A program made the translations under genes and the position numbers. Positions 8,441 to 59,318 of a stretch of 64,000 nt of DNA are shown in pieces. Source of the DNA: Ylistrum balloti. Its lineage: Eukaryota. The stretch lies in assembly GCF_031769215.1 (NCBI RefSeq), contig NW_026781915.1:1054001-1118000 (forward strand). Direction: 5' to 3'. Under the pieces are notes generated by a model. That model was not told the origin of the DNA. It saw nothing but the letters and a program-made list of their open reading frames with translations, and did no database searches. Position 1 is the stretch's first letter, and each line of letters opens with the position of its first letter.

Positions 8441-8560
8441 CTGATCGGACTGCTATGTTAACCTGTCTGTTTTATCATTTTAGCCAAGAGAGAAGGGTAA
8501 TTAATCTGACTGTTATGTTAACCAGTCTGTTTTATCGTTTTAGCCAAGAGAGAAAGGTCG
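8441..8560 (+). repeat. 60-bp tandem duplication including the splice acceptor of exon 8544
   Basis: 8441-8500 and 8501-8560 align at period 60: gactgctatgttaacctgtctgttttatcattttagccaagagagaagg versus gactgttatgttaaccagtctgttttatcgttttagccaagagagaaagg. Confidence 0.92.
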
Positions 8561-8621: not shown

Positions 8622-8737
8622 GTAGGTATAATGATATAGTAATCATACATAGAGGTAAAGGCATTGTCTTTCTTTTACAGCTTAATTCTGACTATTGTGA
8701 CTGACTGAGGATGTGTGTCTCCAGACACAGGGGTGGT

Positions 8738-11300
8738 ATGGGTTTGACACCTGACACAGCTGACTGGGGTATGGAGTTGATGCCTGACAAAGCTGACTGG
8801 GGTATGGAGTTGATGCCTGACACAGCTGACTTGGGTATGGAGTTGATACCTGACACAGCTGACTGGGGTATGGAGTTGATGCCTGACACAGCTGACTGGG
8901 GTATGGAGTTGATGCCTGACACAGCTGACAGGGGTATGGAGTTGATGCCTGACACAGCTGACTGGGGTATGGGTTTGACACCTGACACAGCTGACTGGGG
9001 TATGGAGTTGATGCCTGACAAAGCTGACTGGGGTATGGAGTTGATGCCTGACACAGCTGACTTGGGTATGGAGTTGATACCTGACACAGCTGACTGGGGT
9101 ATGGAGTTGATGCCTGACACAGCTGACTGGGGTATGGAGTTGATGCCTGACACAGCTGACTGGGGTATGGAGTTGATGCCTGACACAGCTGACTGGGGTA
9201 TGGGTTTGACACCTGACACAGCTGACTGGGGTATGGAGTTGATGCCTGACAAAGCTGACTGGGGTATGGAGTTGATGCCTGACACAGCTGACTTGGGTAT
9301 GGAGTTGAAACCTGACACAGCTGACTGGGGTATGGAGTCTATGCCTGACACAGCTGACTGGGGTATGGAGTTGATGCCTGACACAGCTGACTGGGGTATG
9401 GGTTTGACACCTGACACAGCTGACTGGGGTATGGAGTTGATGCCTGACAAAGCTGACTGGGGTATGGAGTTGATGCCTGACACAGCTGACTTGGGTATGG
9501 AGTTGATACCTGACACAGCTGACTGGGGTATTGAGTTGATGCCTGACACAGCTGACTGTGGTATGGAGTTGACGCCCGACACAGATGACTGGGGTATGGA
9601 GTTGATGCCTGACACAGCTGACTGGGGTATGGAGTTGATGCCTGACACAGCTGACTGGGGTATGGAGTTGATGCCTGACACAGCTTAATGTGGTATGGAG
9701 TTGATGCCTGACACAGCTGACTGGGGTATGGAGTTGATGCCTGACACAGCTGACTGGGGTATGGAGTTGATGCCTGACACAGCTGACTGGGGTATGGAGT
9801 TGATGCCTGACACAGCTGACTGGGGTATGGAGTTGATGCCTGACACAGCTGACTGGGGTATGGAGTTGATGCCTGACACAGCTGACTGGGGTATGGAGTT
9901 GATGCCTGACACAGCTGACTGGGGTATGGAGTTGATGCCTGACACAGCTGACTGGGGTATGGAGTTGATGCCTGACACAGCTGACTGGGGTATGGAGTTG
10001 ATGCCTGACACAGCTGACTGGGGTATGGAGTTGATGCCTGACACAGCTGACTGGGGTATGGAGTTGACGCCCGACACAGATGACTGGGGTATGGAGTTGA
10101 TGCCTGACACAGCTGACTGGGGTATGGAGTTGATGCCTGACACAGCTGACTGGGGTATGGAGTTGATGCCTAACACAGCTGATTGAGGTGAGGAGTTGAT
10201 GCCCGACACAGCTGACTGGGATATGGAGTTGATGCCTGACACAGCTGACTGGGGTATGGAGGTGATGCCTGACACAGCTGACTGGGGTATGGAGTTGATG
10301 CCTGACACAGCTGACTGGGGTATGGAGTTGATGCCTGACACAGCTGACTGGGGTATGGAGTTGATGCCTGACACAGCTGACTGGGGTATGGAGTTGATGC
10401 CTGACACAGCTGACTGGGGTATGGAGTTGATGCCTGACACAGCTGACTGGGGTATGGAGTTGATGCCTGACACAGCTGACTGGGGTATGGAGTTGATGCC
10501 TGACACAGCTGACTGGGGTATGGAGTTGATGCCTGACACAGCTGACTGGGGTATTGAGTTGTTGCCTGAAACAGCTGACTGGGGTATGGAGTTGATGCCT
10601 GACACAGCTGACTGGGGTATGGAGTTGATGCCTAACACAGCTGATTGAGGTGAGGAGTTGATGCCCGACACAGCTGACTGGGATATGGAGTTGATGCCTA
10701 ATACAGGTGACTGGATTATGGAGTTGATGCCTGACACAGATGACTGGGGTATGGAGTTGATGCCTGACACGGCTGACTGAGGTATGGAGTTGATGCCTGA
10801 CACGGCTGACTGAGGTATGGAGTTGATGTCTGATATAGCTGACTGGGTTATGGAGTTGATGCCTGACACAGCTATCTGGGGTGTGGAGTTGATACCTGAC
10901 ACAGCTGACTTGGGTATGGAGTTGATGCCTGACACAGCTGACTGGGGTGTGGAGTTGATGCCTGACACAGCTGACTGGGGTATGGAGGTGATGCCTGACA
11001 CAGCTGACTGGGGTATGGAGTTGATGCCTGACACAGCTGACTGGGGTATGGAGTTGATGCCTGACACAGCTGACTGGGGTATGGAGTTGATGCCTGACAC
11101 AGCTGACTGGGGTATGGAGTTGATGCCTGACACAGCTGACTGGGGTATGGAGTTGATGCCTGACACAGCTGACTGGGGTATGGAGTTGATGCCTGACACA
11201 GCTGACTGGGGTATGGAGTTGATGCCTGACACAGCTGACTGGGGTATGGAGTTGATGCCTGACACAGCTGACTGGGGTATGGAGTTGATGCCTGACATAG
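8738..11300 (+). repeat. 33-bp minisatellite (atggagttgatgcctgacacagctgactggggt), about 78 units, with higher-order structure
   Basis: Very homogeneous tandem array; explains the ORFs 8675..11323, 8692..9681, 8711..9688, 9685..11298 and others. Confidence 0.98.
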
Positions 11301-14059
11301 CTGGAGGAGAGCTTTAAATCCAAAATAGTGTTGTAATGTCTACTGCATCAGCTTAGCTAATGGTTTAATACTTGAGACAGCAGACATATAGGATATGTTG
11401 AGACCATTTAGAAGAAAACAAGTGTCATTAGCTGAAGACATTTGTTTCTTGAGTAAAAAAAACACTAGATTATTGTTCTCTGAAATAATATGGTGGGGTA
11501 ATGAAGCTATTCATGTCTACCGGTATGTGTAGGTCTTGATAATAATCAGAAAGATAAAGAGTTAGTGTTCATTTCAGTCCTATCTGTCTTAACACAGCTG
11601 TTCATGTAGATTATAATCCCATGGAGATTGTAATTAATTTTTTTAATAGAGTTTCTTACTCCCTTTGAGATTTTTGCATTTCAATGTTTATTTATTAACT
11701 TTCCAGGTTAACAGATAATTGAAGTATGTTTACCGAGTTTTGTTGAAATTAAACATTGTGATCTTCTCTCTAAACATTTGAGAAAATATCATGAACACAT
11801 GATAATAGCATCTTGTAACAAAGTTAGGGGGTTTATTGGAATCAGGTTGTATGAGATGGCCCTATAGACAACAGTACTATTTTTCTTTATTATTTTTATA
11901 ATTTTCTTAATTCAGAATAATCACTAGAAGACAAAACCTCCTTAATTTTTTTACCCAGTAAGTAAATACAACATTGTAATTTAAGCGGTGTATAAGTAAC
12001 ATATATTCTAAATTAACATTAAAACACATAAATTACAACACACAGGTGTTGTTAAAAAAAAGTACAACTTAGTTCAATCATTAATTGATATATAAATTAC
12101 ATTGATGATATAATCCTAAGCTGTTCCAAGCTAATACAATATAGCTTGTTAATTACTGGTCCAGAGGCTGAAGCCAACACCTGTAAACAAAAGAATTTCT
12201 ATCAGTCTCTAGTGTGCTACAAAGATAAGCTAACAACATTCCAGACTTCACAATCTTGTTTTTGGTTGGAGTTTAAATAGTTTTTTCACATCTTACATCT
12301 TTGTTATTGTCTAGCAGAAATAGTTGCAAATAACTCACAAACAACGCCTATTGACTGAATTGGAGAAGACTAGTACCACTGTAGGTCTGTGCACAGTCGT
12401 AAAGTGTACAATAAAAAAACGGTTTCAGGGCAGGAATGCTAGAGATGTGGACATTTGAAAGCTTCATTTACACTTCTGAAGTATTTGGAGGAGAATCCTG
12501 ATTTTGGAGTTGTAGGAACTAATGGTTATTAAATGAACACAAATGTCAATTTTTTTGTTGATATCGTAATCCATCAACAACAGGTGCATTATTTGTCTAG
12601 TACAAGCGTACTCTTTGTTTGTATGGAAATCCACTAAGTTTTGAAGTCAGGGGTTGAGTTTGGTTTTGAATTTTTTAACTACATTATTAAATATTAACTT
12701 CTTCAAACAATCTGTTTATGATACTTTAAGTAAATATTTGGTTGCAGGAAAGATAATTTCTCCATCCTTTTAAGTTATTATATCCAATTCTCGTTAATTT
12801 TGATGACAATGAGAAATGATATGATCCTGATAACTTATACAGTTGATAATGATGCTGAGGACTTTGACACTGTTCAGGATGATTTTACCAAACGGATGAC
12901 CTTGACAAACATTGATCATGCTGACTTGAAGGATGTATGAAACTCATATTTGACCAGAAATAGAACTGGACTGTAAACAAATTATATAACTTAATATCAT
13001 ATTGACTTCTGCATTTTGATAGACTTTTTACCATTACTTGTACCCCCCCCCCCACCCGCCCAATCCGCCACCCCTCCCCCTCTTTCCCAGCAGTGGAGCA
13101 CTTAATATGATGTTCTATGGAATTTTTCCTCTGGACTACATTAACCCCACCCCATTTGAGCTAAAATTTTGGTTGGAATGTTAAGGAAAGGCAGTCAAAA
13201 AAAGTGTTGTAAATTTTCAACATGGCAGCCAAGGAGGATATTTTGTAATATGATTGTGCAATCATGGTTTTCCTGTGTGACACCCATTTCAAACTTCTTC
13301 TCAAGTTTCTCCAATGGGATTAAGCTACAGCTCTGATATGATGTGTGTTGATGATAATGACAAAGTTGACATTTTTGACACCTGTTTAAGATGAGGAGTT
13401 TGATATAGTGATATTTGATGTTTTGTTACCATGGTGATCAACTACTTTGTTTATTTGTTTGACATTTTAATGTTGACGTTTTGTATTTTCTTAGTTATTG
13501 AAACTGAAAACAGATATGTGTATATTGTAAAAGGCTTTACTCTCTGAGGGTGGCCTTACCAGTAAGTGGCTCCAAGAATGTTCTAGGGTAGTGATGTATT
13601 ACTTAAGTCCTTGTCATAACTTGTGAATGTATTGTCATAGTAACCTTAGTACAGCAGTATGAAATAGGATTATATTGACTGTAAAACACACCGATCTACC
13701 ACCGATACACAGAAATTTTCGTGGTTTTTACATTGTTTAGTAAGTCAGGTTTAAATAGAAAAGTTGTTATCACAGCGAATTTGTTGATTTGTTTCAAGAT
13801 AACTACAGAAATGTAATGAATTTTACAAAAACATCATAAAAGTAAGCACCAGTAGAACTGCATTTTACCAACATGGTAGATAAGTTATAAACTGTGGTAT
13901 TTCACCCCCTCCCACCCATCCGCCTACCTTGTAAACTTATATTTGTTTACTGCCAACATTGGTTATACATAACTGGGAGAGATTTACCCAGGGGTGACTT
14001 AGGTTAAAGTTTTATTTTTGAAATACTTGAAATATATTTTTAATTCTCTTTTTTTTCAG

Positions 14060-14152
14060 ATCAAACTTGTAAACATTCGATCAGATGAAATTGTTGATGG
14101 CAACCCAAAACTGACGCTTGGTCTCATCTGGACCATCATCCTTCATTTCCAG
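14060..14152 (+). CDS. DST: Spectraplakin exon, end of CH1: [31 protein letters not shown]
   Basis: Acceptor ttttttttcag and donor GTAGGT at 14153; 93 nt, phase 0-0. Contains the near-invariant [30 protein letters not shown] motif (seen inside ORF 14018..14356). Confidence 0.98.
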
Positions 14153-34700: not shown

Positions 34701-34814
34701 TTAGCCCTGTGTTGTAGTGAGGATAGAATTAAGTAGGACGCATCACCTCATGACTACCATGTATTGACCGAAGGGGTTCCTGTCACTGACACTAGCCTTA
34801 CTGTTTATTAATGG

Positions 34815-35735
34815 TAGACCTAAGCAGGATTCAGACCCCTGAGACTGACCTTATATTGTGTAGACAGCTGTAGTCCTAAGCAGGATTCAGACCCCTGAGA
34901 CTGGCCTTATATTGTATAGACAGCTGTAGACCTAAGCGGGATTCAGACCCCTGAGACTGACCTTATATTGTGTAGACAGCTGTAGACCTAAGCAGGATTC
35001 AGACCCCTGAGACTGACCTTATATTATGTAGACAGCTGTAGACCTAAGCAGGGTTCAGACCCCTGAGACTGGCCTTATATTATGTAGACAGCTGTAGACC
35101 TAAGCAGGATTTAAATCCCTGAGACTGACTTTATATTGTATAGACAGCTGTAGACCTAAGCAGGATTCAAATCTCTGAGACTGACCTGTCTGATTGACAG
35201 CAGACCTAAGAAGGATTTAAATCCCTGAGACTGACCCGTCTGATTGACAGCAGACCTAAGCAGGATTCAAATCCCTGAGACTGGCCTTATATTGTTTAGA
35301 CAGCTGTAGACCTAAGCAGGATTCAAATCTCTGAGACTGACCCGTCTGATTGACAGCAGACCTAAGAAGGATTTAAATCCTGGAAACTGGCCTTATATTG
35401 TATAAACAGCAAACCTAAGCAGGATTTAAATCTCTGAGACTGACCCGTCTGATTGACAGCAGACCTAAGCAGGATTTAAATCCCTGAGACTGACCCATCT
35501 GATTGACAGCAGACCTAAGCAGGATTTAAATCCCTGAGACTGACCTTATATTGTTTAGACAGCTGTAGACCTAAGCAGGATTCAAATCCCTGAGACTGAC
35601 CTGTCTGATTGACAGCAGACCTAAGAAGGATTCAGATCCTGGAGACTGGCGTTATATAGTATTAACGACGGACCTAAGCAGGATTAAGTGCCCTGGAGTA
35701 GTCCTACATTGTATTGACAGCAGACCTAAGTAGGA
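34815..35735. repeat. Composite 56/50-bp tandem repeat (gacctaagcaggattcagacccctgagactgacc...)
   Basis: Two unit variants interleave, sharing the gacctaagcaggatt...ctgagactg head. Confidence 0.93.
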
Positions 35736-36326
35736 TTCAGCTCCCCAGACTTAATACACAACGTAATATTCACATGATGTTAGATAGAATATGTCTTGGT
35801 CAGGAGCCAGAAGCAAGATCTATAGACTGTTCCAGGTGCTTCCAGAGAAAAAAAATATATTGTTGTTGCGCATATACAGGAAACAAAATGGTGGTTTTGG
35901 GATTCCTGTATATTTCAGGCATGCTGCTGAAAGAAAATTCAATAGTTTGTGAATTGTGATTGGCACTTCTTATAAACTGGTTTCATGTGTTGGGACAAAG
36001 GATTTTGAGCTACTGTGATGCATTCTCGTCTCCGCATTGAAAAAGCTAGCTTCTGATTGAATTGATTATTTCAGGAAGATAAACATTTGTTATTTTTATT
36101 TCACGACTCCGTCCTTTTGTGTTAAATCTGTCACGATATGATCGAGACACATGAGTTTGTTCTGTTCTGGATTTTTACCGTCTGATACCAAAAAGATTTT
36201 GGTGCATTCTTAGACGAATCAGTAATCGATACAATGTGACAGTTAAAAGACTTTTGTGGTCGGCACCCGTCTAACATTTGAACCTCTGCATGAATTTGTG
36301 GCCAAGAATACGTTTGGAAGCAGTAA

Positions 36327-36660
36327 CATTGTGTGACATTGGAGTTGATACCTGTGTGACATTTGGAGTTGATACCTGTGTGACATTGGAGCCGATACCC
36401 GTGTAATTTTTGGAGTTGATACCTGTGTGTCATTTGGAGTTGATACCTGTATGACATTTGGAGTTGATACCTGTATGACATTTGGAGTTGATACCTGTGT
36501 GACATTTGGAGTTGATACCTGTGTGACATTGGAGCTGATACCCTTGTGAAATTTTGGAGTTATCTACCTGTGTGATTTTTGGAGTGGATATTTGTGCAAC
36601 ATCTAGAGTTGATAACTGTGTGACATTTTGACACAGTATCTGTGTGATTTTTGGAAACGG
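36327..36660. repeat. 24-bp minisatellite (tttggagttgatacctgtgtgaca)
   Basis: Tandem 23-24-mers; source of the HRYQLQMS-type ORFs. Confidence 0.92.
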
Positions 36661-37658
36661 CACCTATATGTTTGCATTAGAGTTAGCTAAACATATGTGA
36701 CATGTGTGACCCATGTAACTTTTAGAGATGATTCAGGGATATGTTGGACATATATAGACATAACTAGAAAGAATGTTATGGAACCGTTTTAATGTCAGGG
36801 GATACAACTAATCACCTGTATCATGATTAATTCCATATATACCTTGAATTTACTAGATATATTAACCAGATGTTGGACATGCTGTACATGTTTGTGTTAA
36901 TGATTATGTAATCAACACTATGTTGACACTATCTCCACATACCTATAATCTGATAACACACATATGTACACATATTGTTTGATAATCAGGTTGTATGGTT
37001 AATAGCTTTGGTGTGACATGCAGGGTTTACCAAGTGTATTTGTTAGAAATGTCTGACCAGCACACAGGCTCTCCTCAGCAAAAATGATTTTGACGGCATC
37101 AAACTGAATCCACTCTGAAAATCATTGGTAAAAACTTGGATGTTTAACCGTCCAATGAAATGCTTATATACACTTACATCTCAGAATTTGAAATAACTTC
37201 TTCATTTTAGAAGTTTTATGCCGATTCTGATGTCAAGTTTACTGCATGGAATGCAACTAAGCTTAGATATTTGAAGAAAAATGCTGTTAAGTTTAGGATG
37301 TTGACAGGCAAATGTTTTATGATGGATTATTTTGTGGTGTGATCCAGAAATAAATGCCTTTACCTCTGACACGGATTCCTGACAGACGATAGCATCGTGA
37401 TACCACAGACATTGGAGACCTTTATCAGAGATAATGTGTGACTTGCGAAAGTGGAACCAAAATGGCAGCTGTCGAGAAAAGCATAAGGAATTGTAATTCA
37501 GTAATCAAGTTTATAAAAAATGTCCCAGTTAATTTCAGTGCTCTGGATAATGAATTATTAAACACACACTCCTGCATAATGCTGACAAAAGTTGTCTCCC
37601 TTGATATATTTACATTGGATGTGACAATGACAGTTTTATTTCAAAGAGATCAATAACT

Positions 37659-38027
37659 ATGATCAAGTGGACATGGAATTTATTAGAAAAAGCCAGAAGT
37701 ACTCCAGACATTTCCTCACACAATGGCCACTTTCTGGCTCCAGAACAACGGAGTTACTTCCCCTGGAGGCGTTTGTCCCCTTCTCCACTGCCGGTCCTCA
37801 GGGTAGTGCGCCCCTGTCTTAGATGTGGTTGTTACTATTCTTGTATGTGCGGCTTGTCTCCATGGCTAAAGACCAGACGGCCATCTTTACAGGAAGCTGT
37901 CCGCGGACTATTACTTCCTGACACCCTCACAGTGCGTCGGTGGTCTTTCCAAAACACCATCAGGAAGTTGTCTGAACCTAATGTCGTAAGAAGATATTCG
38001 CTTCCAACAAATATTGAAAATTATGTG
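37659..38027 (+). CDS. Putative alternative first coding exon (123 aa, Cys cluster, five R-R/K-x-S motifs)
   Basis: First 123 codons of non-repetitive ORF 37659..38150, locally more GC-rich. Phase-0 donor GTG|GTAAAA at 38028 (moderate strength), after which the sequence reverts to AT-rich intron-like DNA. Confidence 0.65.
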
Positions 38028-38719
38028 GTAAAAGGGATTTCATACGATATTCTCTCATTATTCTCAGTTCACTTTTCATTTTATGACGATGTTGCATGGA
38101 TTAAAACTTTGCCTTTCCTTCTCCAGCCATTTAAAAATGTATTTTTGTAAACAGATATATTCTATATGAAATTACATGTTTACTAATGGTTTTTATCCAA
38201 ACTACTTGATTTAGAATTTTTGTTCATTAATATTTCATATTTTTTTACTTGCACATATTGACATGAATACTGTCCTGTAGTTATGAAGTATTAGCTAAAA
38301 CTGTGTCTACCACAGGTGGCTGTGGTAGGGAAGGCAACAGTGCTGTAATATGTAGGTAGCTTGTTTTAGTTTTCACTGCTAATGTCACGTCACTGCCTCA
38401 TTTTCTCTAGTATTAGTCAACATCTACTATTGATTCATCAGTGTCTGTTGCTATCAGTTATCATGTATGGCTATGTTGTATGCCTTTTGTTTACAAATGG
38501 TTTTTGGACTCTGATAGGACATTTGCAACATATGTTGTTTGATATAGCTTTAGTTACATATGGATTCTTAATGGTTTCTTATATGACTTAAGTTAAAAAT
38601 GGTTTCTAAATGGTTTCGATGGTTTCTTATATTTCTAAAGTTACAAATGGTTTCATATATGGCTTTAGTGACATATGTTTTCTTATTTGACTTTTTAAAA
38701 CCAAATGAGAAAAATCTCT

Positions 38720-39780
38720 ATTATGACATTATTACCAATGGTTTCCTACATGACATTATTACCAGTGGTTTTTTACATGACATTATTACCAATGGTTTCC
38801 AACATGACATTATTACCAATGGTTTTTTACATGACATTATTACCAATGGTTTCTTACATGACATTATTACCAGTGGTATTTTACATGACATTATTACCAA
38901 TGATTTCTTACATGACATTATTACCAATGGTTTCCTACATGACATTATTACCAATGGTTTCTTACATGAAATTATAACCAGTGGTTTCTTACATGACATT
39001 ATTACCAGTGGTTTCCTACATGACATTATTACCAGTGGTTTCTTACATGAAATTATAACCAGTGGTTTCTTACATGACATTATTACCAGTGGTTTCTTAC
39101 ATGACATTATTACCAGTGGTTTCTTACATGACATTATTACCTGTGGTTTCTAGTGGTTTTTTACATGACATTATTACCAGTGGTTTCTAGTGGTTGTTTA
39201 CATGAAATTATAACCAGTGGTTTCTTACATGACATTATTACCAGTGGTTTCTTACATGACATTATTATCAATGGTTTCTTACATGACATTATTACCAGTG
39301 GTTTCTAGTGGTTGTTTACATGACATTATTACCAGTGGTTTCTTACATGACATTATTACCAGTGGTTTCTTATATGACATTATTACCAGTGGTTTCTTAC
39401 ATGACATTATTACCAGTGGTTTCTTACATGACTTAACTTACAAATGGTTTCTTACATGACATTATTACCAGTGGTTTCTAGTGGTTTCTTACATGACATT
39501 ATTACCAGTGGTTTCTAGTGGTTGTTTACATGACATTATTACCAGTGGTTTCTTACATGACATTATTACCAGTGGTTTCTAGTGGTTTTTTACATGACAT
39601 TATTACCAGTGGTTTCTAGTGGTTGTTTACATGACATTATTACCAGTGGTTTCTTACATGACATTATTACCAATGGTTTCTAGTGGTTTTTTACATGACA
39701 TTATTACCAGTGGTTTCTAGTGGTTGTTTACATGACATTATTACCAGTGGTTTCTTACATGACATTATTACAAATGGTTT
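38720..39780. repeat. 27-bp minisatellite (acatgacattattaccagtggtttctt), later units carrying a 10-bp ctagtggttt/g insertion
   Basis: Tandem repeats; source of the HDIITSGFL and VSYMTLLP ORFs. Confidence 0.95.
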
Positions 39781-40429
39781 CTCGTGTACATTACCATGGT
39801 AACAGCAGATCTTTGTCATGACCTTTTGTTCTAATGATTTGTTATATTTGCTTACTGATACAATACTACAGTTTACAGTAAAAACATGCTTGATATTTTC
39901 AATTTATCCATCAATAAGCCCATGCCTGGTAGAAAAACCCATCTATATCTCTTGGTAAAAAAAATGTAAACTAATGCTATTTTGTTGTCCTGCAATAAGC
40001 CTACCCGATCCTTAAAGTCATATTCTATGTTTCATATAATGATTACAGAGTAATAATGCTTTCTTATGTTTCTAAATTTACCTTGAGATTCCTGAAATGG
40101 TCTCTGCTTGTACAGTGATGTTTCGGAAATAACCTTTACGATTCTACAAATGACCGCTTATTCAAATGTGAATTTTCTATGGTGAACGTAAGCTTTTACA
40201 AATTTTTCTGTTTTGAACAAAAGATTTTACAAATGGTCTTTTATATAGCCTTTTGTGACAAACATCTTTGTGATTCAGCTTATGGTTTATGTGACAATGG
40301 TGTCCTTATCCTTCTTGCAGACTTTCCTTATCTCCTTCCAGGATGGCTTTATACCATCTGTCTGCCACTGTGCTATCTCAATCTGTCTGCCATATCATTT
40401 CCCTGCTGAACTCCAGCATAATGTGGGAT

Positions 40430-59151: not shown

Positions 59152-59318
59152 GTGTCAGACGTTGTCGTCCCTGGACAACCTGAAGACATCACAGCCAAAG
59201 AAGCCTTGTTGCTATGGAGTCGACGAACAGTGGAAGGCTACCCTGGGGTCAAGATCAACAACTTCAGCAAAAGTTGGAGGGACGGACGTGCATTCCTATC
59301 CATTATACACAGACACAG
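59152..59318 (+). CDS. DST: Spectraplakin exon, linker plus first half of CH2: VSDVVVPGQPEDITAKEALLLWSRRTVEGYPGVKINNFSKSWRDGRAFLSIIHRH(R)
   Basis: Acceptor ccctgtgttgtag and donor GTCAGT at 59319; 167 nt, phase 0-2. Shows the CH2 motifs TAKExLLLW and NFxxSWRDGxAF; continues exon 14060-14152 in frame. Confidence 0.96.

What the first reader, a model, noticed from the sequence alone, without database searches (positions are those of the whole stretch)
37659..38027. 123-aa leader with five basophilic kinase motifs and a five-Cys cluster
Seen: RRLS (37-40), RRPS (74-76 region), RRWS, RKLS and RRYS all occur within 123 residues, along with PCLRCGCYYSCMCG, and a phase-0 donor follows directly after the last motif (RRYSLPTNIENYV|gtaaaa). 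Known: R-R/K-x-S is the PKA consensus, RxxSxP (RRYSLP) is a 14-3-3-type motif, and Cys clusters are typical of palmitoylation or metal binding. Such motif density is unlikely in a spurious ORF. Inference: a phospho-switchable membrane-targeting N-terminus replacing CH1.
Basis: partly seen in the sequence, partly recalled or inferred. Interest (0 to 1): 0.85.

Follow-up and report, generated by a model that had tools for sequence, protein, structure and literature searches.

The report
Conserved alternative start exon, spectraplakin-like gene
The 123-codon reading frame is a real protein-coding exon kept by selection, with its own start codon and a conserved splice donor; it most likely gives a giant cytoskeletal linker protein an alternative, strongly basic, cysteine- and RRxS-rich N-terminus lacking the first actin-binding half-domain, but no transcript could be checked.

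Summary
ORF 37659-38027 (+) reads exactly as described. It has five [RK][RK]xS sites, against 0.27 expected from residue shuffles (none of 20,000 reached five), and five Cys within 12 residues (P=4.5e-4).

It is a real coding exon, not a chance ORF. One relative (P0001, on the 1.1-kb genomic-like Logan contig L001) has the same exon at 79% amino-acid identity.
- Nucleotide similarity starts at the ATG and stops at the G|GTAAA donor. It is 72% in the exon and 37-40% in the immediate flanks.
- Of 99 differences, 64 fall on third codon positions (P=2e-10; pN 0.12, pS 0.74).
- Four of five basophilic sites, RxxSxP and all five Cys are kept.

The exon lies on the gene's strand in the 45-kb intron between the last CH1 exon (14060-14152) and the first CH2 exon (59152-59318) of a plectin/MACF1-like gene. 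All three boundaries are phase 0. This matches the known C-type/type-3 (CH2-only) spectraplakin isoforms made from internal promoters.

The junction 38027>59152 was not shown. The only sequencing run found looks like genomic DNA, and the protein searches could not see long isoforms. Kinase, 14-3-3 and palmitoylation roles are motif-level inference.

Verdict: new member of a known kind, moderate interest.

The parts
37228..37428 (+). Weakly conserved non-coding block 230-430 nt upstream of the ATG. It includes the 21-mer GATACCACAGACATTGGAGAC at 37399-37419, which matches the relative at 19 of 21 bases. Candidate promoter or 5'UTR element.
   Evidence: blastn 63% over 227 nt, E 1e-8; 54% against 37-40% in other flanks. 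The ORF called here in L001 (124-324) is not open in the window.
37659..38027 (+). Coding exon of 123 codons starting at ATG 37659, with A at -3 in both species. It encodes a basic (net +12), Ser/Pro/Arg-rich lead peptide predicted to be largely disordered.
37767..37778 (+). RRLS (residues 37-40). In the relative it reads RCCS, so only RxxS is kept.
37812..37853 (+). Cys cluster PCLRCGCYYSCMCG (residues 52-65). All five Cys are invariant in the relative. Candidate S-acylation or metal-binding site.
37875..37886 (+). RRPS (residues 73-76), the start of the invariant stretch TRRPSLQEAVRGLLLPDT (residues 72-89)
37935..37946 (+). RRWS (residues 93-96); RRLS in the relative
37962..37973 (+). RKLS (residues 102-105); invariant
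37989..38006 (+). RRYSLP (residues 111-116); RRSSLP in the relative. A basophilic site that also fits RxxSxP.
38028..38033 (+). Phase-0 splice donor G|GTAAAA. G|GTAAA is conserved in the relative, and similarity ends right after it.
14060..14152 (+). Last CH1 exon ([31 protein letters not shown]), with a phase-0 donor CAG|GTAGGT
59152..59318 (+). First CH2 exon (VSDVVVPGQPEDITAKEALLLW...), with a phase-0 acceptor tgttgtag|GTG. This is the presumed splice target of the lead exon.

Best explanation
37659-38027 is a real, selectively maintained protein-coding 5' exon inside the 45-kb CH1-CH2 intron of a spectraplakin-type (plectin/MACF1/dystonin/Shot-like) gene. The most likely working: an internal promoter upstream of 37659 starts a transcript. 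Translation begins at ATG 37659. The phase-0 donor at 38027|38028 is spliced to the phase-0 acceptor of the first CH2 exon at 59152. The product is a C-type/type-3 isoform that lacks CH1, and so binds actin weakly, and carries a 123-residue lead sequence instead. That lead is strongly basic and probably disordered. It has an invariant N-terminal 19-mer, a five-Cys cluster and four to five R-R/K-x-S sites, one of them RxxSxP. By inference only, the Cys cluster (S-acylation) together with the basic charge holds the N-terminus on a membrane, and phosphorylation by basophilic kinases (PKA, PKG, CaMK or PKD class) with or without 14-3-3 binding weakens that hold. Status of each step: coding exon, start codon and donor are shown (about 0.95). 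Belonging to the host gene as an alternative first exon is inferred (about 0.65). The lipid/phospho switch is speculative (about 0.25).
For: Homologue P0001 has 79% identity over 98% of the query (E 7e-55). It sits on contig L001, which is colinear with the window. Identity is 72% across 37656-38033, against 40% just upstream and 37% just downstream. Differences by codon position are 22/13/64, P=2e-10; pN 0.124, pS 0.74, dN/dS about 0.04 with dS saturated. The only indel is 6 nt and in frame. The peptides upstream of the ATG are unrelated, with in-frame stops in both species, and A stands at -3 in both. G|GTAAA is conserved and the read-through tails are unrelated, 40 aa against 6 aa. A second individual (run X1) shows 17 differences over 1911 nt, none of the 15 placed ones falling between 37546 and 38119 (P about 0.002). 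The exon shares the strand of the gene's CH exons, and the CH1 donor, lead donor and CH2 acceptor are all phase 0. The CH2 exon is closest to plectin and MACF1 (E 2e-20 and 1e-14). The literature says all spectraplakins make CH2-only isoforms with alternative lead sequences from separate promoters, and that dystonin leads carry lipidation motifs (10.1101/122010; PMC3352950). The motifs are enriched and conserved.
Against: No transcript evidence exists. The single run found is colinear with the genome across both exon borders and looks like DNA (556 Mb in 2.3 million contigs), so it says nothing about splicing. No spliced product of 68-285 aa carrying the lead is in the protein collection. Longer isoforms could not be searched. 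The lead was found in only one other data set. It was not found in 37 kb upstream of the CH2 exon of a more distant relative or in JGI metagenome contigs. There is no Pfam family, no similar cluster in the Atlas (best score 0.68) and no confident fold (pLDDT 48). Motif conservation on its own is not significant at 79% overall identity.
Confidence: 0.6

Rival explanations
1. First coding exon of a separate, unannotated gene nested in the intron on the same strand. Its donor would splice to downstream exons lying between 38 and 59 kb, or beyond, that are not part of the spectraplakin.
For: The exon is clearly coding and spliced, but nothing ties it physically to exon 59152. It has no sequence relation to any known spectraplakin lead. 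It is absent upstream of CH2 in a more distant relative.
Against: No other convincing non-repetitive open frame stands out downstream in the intron. Same strand plus matching phase 0 fits the host gene. A same-strand nested gene would need its own poly(A) site inside the host intron. Internal-promoter lead exons at exactly this position are the rule in this gene family (10.1101/122010).
Confidence: 0.25
2. An unspliced small protein gene of 163 aa here and 127 aa in the relative, translated from a single exon.
For: The frame stays open past the donor in both species. The gene caller reported it that way for L001.
Against: Similarity ends exactly at G|GTAAA. The tails after that point are unrelated in sequence and in length.
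Confidence: 0.07
3. An internal cassette exon inserted between CH1 and CH2, using the AG at 37645-37646, rather than a first exon.
For: In the window, an AG preceded by a T-rich tract lies 12 nt upstream of the ATG in frame, and both neighbouring exons are phase 0.
Against: The sequence upstream of the ATG is not conserved. The only AG close upstream of the ATG in L001 (431-432) would be out of frame. Conservation begins at the ATG.
Confidence: 0.05
4. A chance ORF or repeat-derived frame with no function.
For: There is no family, no fold and only one homologue.
Against: The excess of third-position changes has P=2e-10, pN is far below pS, the conserved block has sharp borders, and the ORF is single-copy.
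Confidence: 0.03

Closest known systems
C-type Shot / type-3 MACF1 and dystonin (BPAG1a3, MACF1a3) N-termini: CH2-only spectraplakin isoforms started from an internal promoter
   Same: The lead exon lies in the intron between the CH1 and CH2 exons, on the same strand, with its own ATG and a splice phase matching the first CH2 exon. A CH2-only product is predicted. Dystonin leads likewise carry lipid-anchor motifs (10.1101/122010; PMC3352950).
   Different: There is no sequence similarity. There is no N-myristoylation motif: the lead starts MIKW, with no Gly at position 2. At 123 residues it is long. An array of R-R/K-x-S sites has not, to my knowledge, been described for spectraplakin leads. 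The junction itself is unproven here.
S-acylated cysteine clusters of peripheral membrane proteins (SNAP-25 linker, cysteine-string protein, GAP-43 N-terminus). From general knowledge, not tested here.
   Same: Several Cys lie within about 12 residues in a hydrophobic and basic setting, all conserved.
   Different: Homology was not tested. The cluster is internal (residues 53-64) rather than at the extreme N-terminus. It could equally bind a metal.
Electrostatic or phospho-switch membrane binders (MARCKS effector domain, K-Ras4B tail) and 14-3-3 mode-I sites (RxxpSxP). From general knowledge.
   Same: Net charge is +12, with Ser residues in basophilic kinase contexts spread through the basic region. 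RRYSLP/RRSSLP is conserved.
   Different: These are short linear motifs only. No experimental or structural support exists, and the lead has no relation by descent to these proteins.

Membership tests
Spectraplakin / plakin-type actin-binding domain (host gene) | Tandem CH1-CH2 of plectin/MACF1 type, with the HFQ|(I/V)SD linker exon boundary | tested here: met
   Pfam CH matches both exons. The CH2 exon's best solved relatives are plectin at 2e-20 and MACF1 at 1e-14, ahead of spectrin and actinin. The CH1 exon ends ...[10 protein letters not shown].
Spectraplakin / plakin-type actin-binding domain (host gene) | Plakin domain, spectrin-repeat rod, EF hands and GAR domain downstream | not testable with these tools
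   They would lie outside the 64-kb window.
C-type / type-3 (CH2-only) spectraplakin lead exon | Exon located between the last CH1 exon and the first CH2 exon, on the gene's strand | tested here: met
   37659-38027 (+) lies between 14152 and 59152.
C-type / type-3 (CH2-only) spectraplakin lead exon | Own start codon, with non-coding sequence upstream | tested here: met
   Conservation starts at the ATG. In-frame stops stand at 37602-37604 in the window and 368-370 in L001. The upstream peptides are unrelated. A is at -3 in both species.
C-type / type-3 (CH2-only) spectraplakin lead exon | Donor in phase with the first CH2 exon | tested here: met
   The phase-0 donor G|GTAAA is conserved, and the acceptor at 59152 is phase 0.
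C-type / type-3 (CH2-only) spectraplakin lead exon | Transcript joining the lead exon to the CH2 exon | not testable with these tools
   The only run found (X1) is colinear with the genome and looks like DNA. Protein searches are bounded by length.
C-type / type-3 (CH2-only) spectraplakin lead exon | Own promoter or transcription start upstream | tested here: inconclusive
   A weakly conserved non-coding block lies at 37228-37428, but there are no data on transcript 5' ends.
Dystonin isoform-3 type myristoylated lead | N-terminal Met-Gly myristoylation motif | tested here: not met
   The peptide starts MIKWTW in both species.
PKA-class basophilic kinase substrate sites | R-R/K-x-S/T sequence motif | tested here: met
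   Five sites are present, enriched over shuffles. Four are kept as [RK][RK]xS and one as RxxS in the relative.
PKA-class basophilic kinase substrate sites | Actual phosphorylation of the Ser | not testable with these tools
   Needs phosphoproteomics or a kinase assay.
14-3-3 mode-I binding site | R-x-x-pS-x-P | tested here: met
   RRYSLP in the window and RRSSLP in the relative. Binding was not tested.
S-acylated Cys cluster | Clustered Cys that are acylated | tested here: inconclusive
   The cluster is present and invariant. Acylation cannot be tested here.

The most novel reading that the evidence does not exclude
The lead is a lineage-specific regulatory module. It would turn a spectraplakin into a membrane-anchored microtubule/cytoskeleton linker that does not depend on actin. 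Attachment through S-acylated cysteines and a +12 charge would be released by cAMP- or Ca2+-dependent kinases acting on four to five RRxS sites, followed by 14-3-3 capture. That would put the location of a giant cytolinker under second-messenger control.
Probability: 0.15. Interest if true: 0.6.

Novelty: new member of a known kind. Interest (0 to 1): 0.4.

Why it matters
Spectraplakins organise actin, microtubules and membranes, and their alternative N-termini decide where the giant protein acts. According to the Shot review (10.1101/122010), no function has been assigned to the Shot lead sequences. This lead exon is under clear purifying selection and carries a dense, conserved array of kinase-type sites beside a conserved Cys cluster. 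That makes a concrete hypothesis of regulated targeting for a CH2-only isoform, testable in an animal outside the usual models. It also shows that the genome holds a real coding exon with no recognisable family (no Pfam match, one homologue), which homology-based annotation could miss. It is not a new principle.

Tried and rejected
- **Chance ORF:** rejected on the codon-position pattern and the sharp conservation borders.
- **Repeat or transposon origin:** rejected. The ORF is single-copy in the window and has no Pfam match. The only other hit among 1.84 billion representatives, P0002, is a tandem-repeat frame that matches 26 residues.
- **Internal cassette reading and unspliced 163-aa reading:** both disfavoured.
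- **Alternative donor at 38024:** no GT stands at that place in L001.
- **RNA evidence:** The look-up of sequencing runs gave one run. Its contig is colinear with the genome and has no joints, so it is most likely DNA.
- **Exact look-up of the 163-aa frame:** not on record.
- **Search for spliced fragments of up to 285 aa:** only P0001 was found.
- **Two metagenome scans, one by peptide patterns and one by a degenerate QEAVRGLLLPD pattern:** nothing.
- **Walk upstream of the CH2 exon in a relative:** 37 kb of the 101-kb contig ERZ25073254 ctg84903 (loci L002, L005, L006, L007) was covered. Neither the lead nor a CH1 exon was found, only retroelement ORFs. One look-up was wasted on wrong minus-strand coordinates.
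- **Atlas feature search:** best score 0.68, an N-terminal PDE4D-like cluster, which is below any useful level.
- **AlphaFold2 on the two-sequence alignment:** pLDDT 48, so no fold search was run.
no match in the relatives' loci, which is uninformative.
- **Accession SRR27895284:** appears in no paper.

Full report
**What is in the sequence.**
- The five basophilic sites are RRLS 37-40, RRPS 73-76, RRWS 93-96, RKLS 102-105 and RRYS 111-114. The last continues as RRYSLP.
- The five Cys are at 53, 56, 58, 62 and 64.
- Shuffling the residues gives a mean of 0.27 [RK][RK]xS sites, and none of 20,000 shuffles reached five. All Cys falling within 13 residues has P=4.5e-4.
- The ORF has 47% G+C, against 35% and 31% in the neighbouring kilobases.
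- Its 181-codon stop-to-stop frame equals the longest in the window outside clear tandem-repeat arrays.
- It occurs once in the window.
- The peptide has net charge +12, with 12 Pro and 19 Ser+Thr. It has no Pfam family. An AlphaFold2 model is of low confidence (pLDDT 48.5), which agrees with a largely disordered lead.

**Where it lies.** The window carries the 5' part of a spectraplakin-type gene on the + strand.
- There is a PREKGR exon near 8544.
- The last CH1 exon is 14060-14152 (IKLVNIR...[10 protein letters not shown]), with donor CAG|GTAGGT in phase 0.
- The first CH2 exon is 59152-59318 (VSDVVVPGQPEDITAKEALLLW...), whose acceptor is also phase 0.
- The best solved relatives of the CH2 exon are plectin (E 2e-20) and MACF1 (1e-14), ahead of spectrins and actinins.
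- The ORF sits in the 45-kb CH1-CH2 intron, on the same strand, and its donor is phase 0.

**Is it a real exon?** Yes. A word-indexed search of 5.8 billion proteins and a full HMMER scan of 1.84 billion representatives both found one true relative. This is P0001, 127 aa, 79-80% identical over the whole lead. It is encoded on a 1129-nt Logan contig from SRR27895284 (L001). The second hit, P0002, is a tandem-repeat frame and is noise.

L001 is colinear with the window, but the two are far apart.
- Identity is 72% across 37656-38033, 40% in the 227 nt before that and 37% in the 100 nt after.
- The similar block starts at TATGAT and ends at TGGTAAA, that is, from the start codon to the splice donor.
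- Of the 99 differences inside it, 22, 13 and 64 fall on codon positions 1, 2 and 3 (binomial P=2e-10).
- Nei-Gojobori gives pN 0.124 and pS 0.74. Synonymous sites are saturated, so dN/dS is about 0.04 or somewhat higher.
- The single indel is 6 nt and in frame.
- Upstream of the ATG both species soon have in-frame stops, the peptides are unrelated, and both keep A at -3.
- Downstream of the donor the read-through tails are unrelated: 40 residues here, 6 in L001.

Within the species, the contig of a second individual (run X1) differs at 17 of 1911 positions. None of the 15 whose positions are listed lies between 37546 and 38119 (P about 0.002 if evenly spread).

So the exon, its start codon and its donor at 38027|38028 are all under selection.

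A weaker conserved non-coding block lies at 37228-37428. It includes a 21-mer that matches at 19 of 21 bases at 37399-37419. It is a candidate promoter or 5'UTR element.

**Are the motifs conserved?**
- In P0001, RRPS, RKLS and the RxxSxP site are kept. RRWS becomes RRLS and RRYS becomes RRSS. RRLS becomes RCCS, so only RxxS is kept there.
- All five Cys are invariant.
- The first 19 residues are identical, as is the stretch TRRPSLQEAVRGLLLPDT, residues 72-89.
- At 79% overall identity this alone proves little.
- However, the free 'x' positions changed in 3 of 5 motifs and the defining R/K/S positions in 1 of 15 (Fisher P=0.03). That is the pattern expected if the motif itself is what is kept.

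**Which gene does it serve?** This is the open point.
- The only run holding the stretch covers intron, exon and intron without a joint. It consists of 2.3 million contigs totalling 556 Mb and is most likely genomic DNA. It therefore says nothing about splicing, and the reads tools were then exhausted.
- No protein of 68-285 aa with the lead joined to anything else is in the collection.
- Full-length isoforms of thousands of residues are outside the length window of that search. In the 50% clusters they would be represented by another isoform. An annotated isoform with this N-terminus could therefore exist unseen.
- Relatives' CH2 exons were found on genomic contigs.
- I walked 37 kb upstream of the CH2 exon on a 101-kb contig of a more distant relative (71% identity in the CH2 exon). 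I found neither the lead nor a CH1 exon, only retroelement ORFs. This is uninformative.
- Two metagenome scans found nothing.

The assignment to the host gene therefore rests on four points:
- The exon is on the same strand as the gene.
- Its phase matches that of the CH2 exon.
- No other evident coding frame lies downstream in the intron.
- Shot, MACF1 and dystonin all make CH2-only (C-type, type-3) isoforms with alternative lead sequences from separate promoters, and dystonin leads carry myristoylation or palmitoylation motifs (10.1101/122010; PMC3352950).

I put this reading at about 0.65, a nested separate gene at about 0.25, and the remaining readings together at about 0.1.

**How it probably works.** Shown: a translated, spliced 5' exon. 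Inferred: an internal promoter yields a CH1-less isoform. Such isoforms bind F-actin only weakly (PMC3352950), and its location would be set by the lead. The lead's charge and Cys cluster would favour membrane binding through S-acylation. Phosphorylation at up to five basophilic sites would remove much of the +12 charge, and RRYSLP could recruit 14-3-3. These last steps rest on short linear motifs and general knowledge only. The lead is not a myristoylated type-3 lead, because it has no Gly at position 2.

**Verdict.** The isoform interpretation is plausible and fits a well-known design, so this is a new, lineage-restricted member of a known kind rather than a new principle. The phospho-switch idea is an attractive, testable hypothesis without direct support. 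Interest is moderate.

Noticed in passing
window 8675-11323: A 2.6-kb, G+C-rich (53%), strongly GC-skewed minisatellite lies in the intron between the PREKGR exon and the last CH1 exon. It gives spurious ORFs of up to 890 codons in several frames on both strands.
   Followed up: no
window 38570-39791: A 1.2-kb tandem array of 27-nt units (higher-order periods of 54 and 81 nt) begins about 540 nt downstream of the lead exon's donor. Further arrays lie at 34814-35739 (56 nt) and 36330-36628 (24 nt), so the exon sits between minisatellites.
   Followed up: partly
window 37228-37428: A non-coding block is weakly conserved with the relative L001 (54-63% identity). Its core is GATACCACAGACATTGGAGAC at 37399-37419. 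The ORF that the gene caller placed here in L001 (124-324) is closed after 7 codons in the window.
   Followed up: partly
Both end in phase 0 with GTAAGA and GTATGA donors. tblastn found no counterpart in the relatives' loci that I held, which does not test them.
   Followed up: partly
L002:12559-15543, L007:12085-15204, L005:1010-3757: In a relative (ENA ERZ25073254 ctg84903, 101 kb), the sequence around the CH2 exon is full of retroelement ORFs. An endonuclease plus reverse-transcriptase ORF lies just downstream of the exon, another lies about 32 kb upstream, and ORF-bearing units of about 3.6 kb are repeated upstream. No CH1 exon lies within 37 kb, so the large CH1-CH2 intron is shared.
   Followed up: partly
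window 36650-38560: A second individual (run X1) differs at 0.9% of positions, with differences clustered at 36837-36916 and 37288-37315. This level of polymorphism is high.
   Followed up: no
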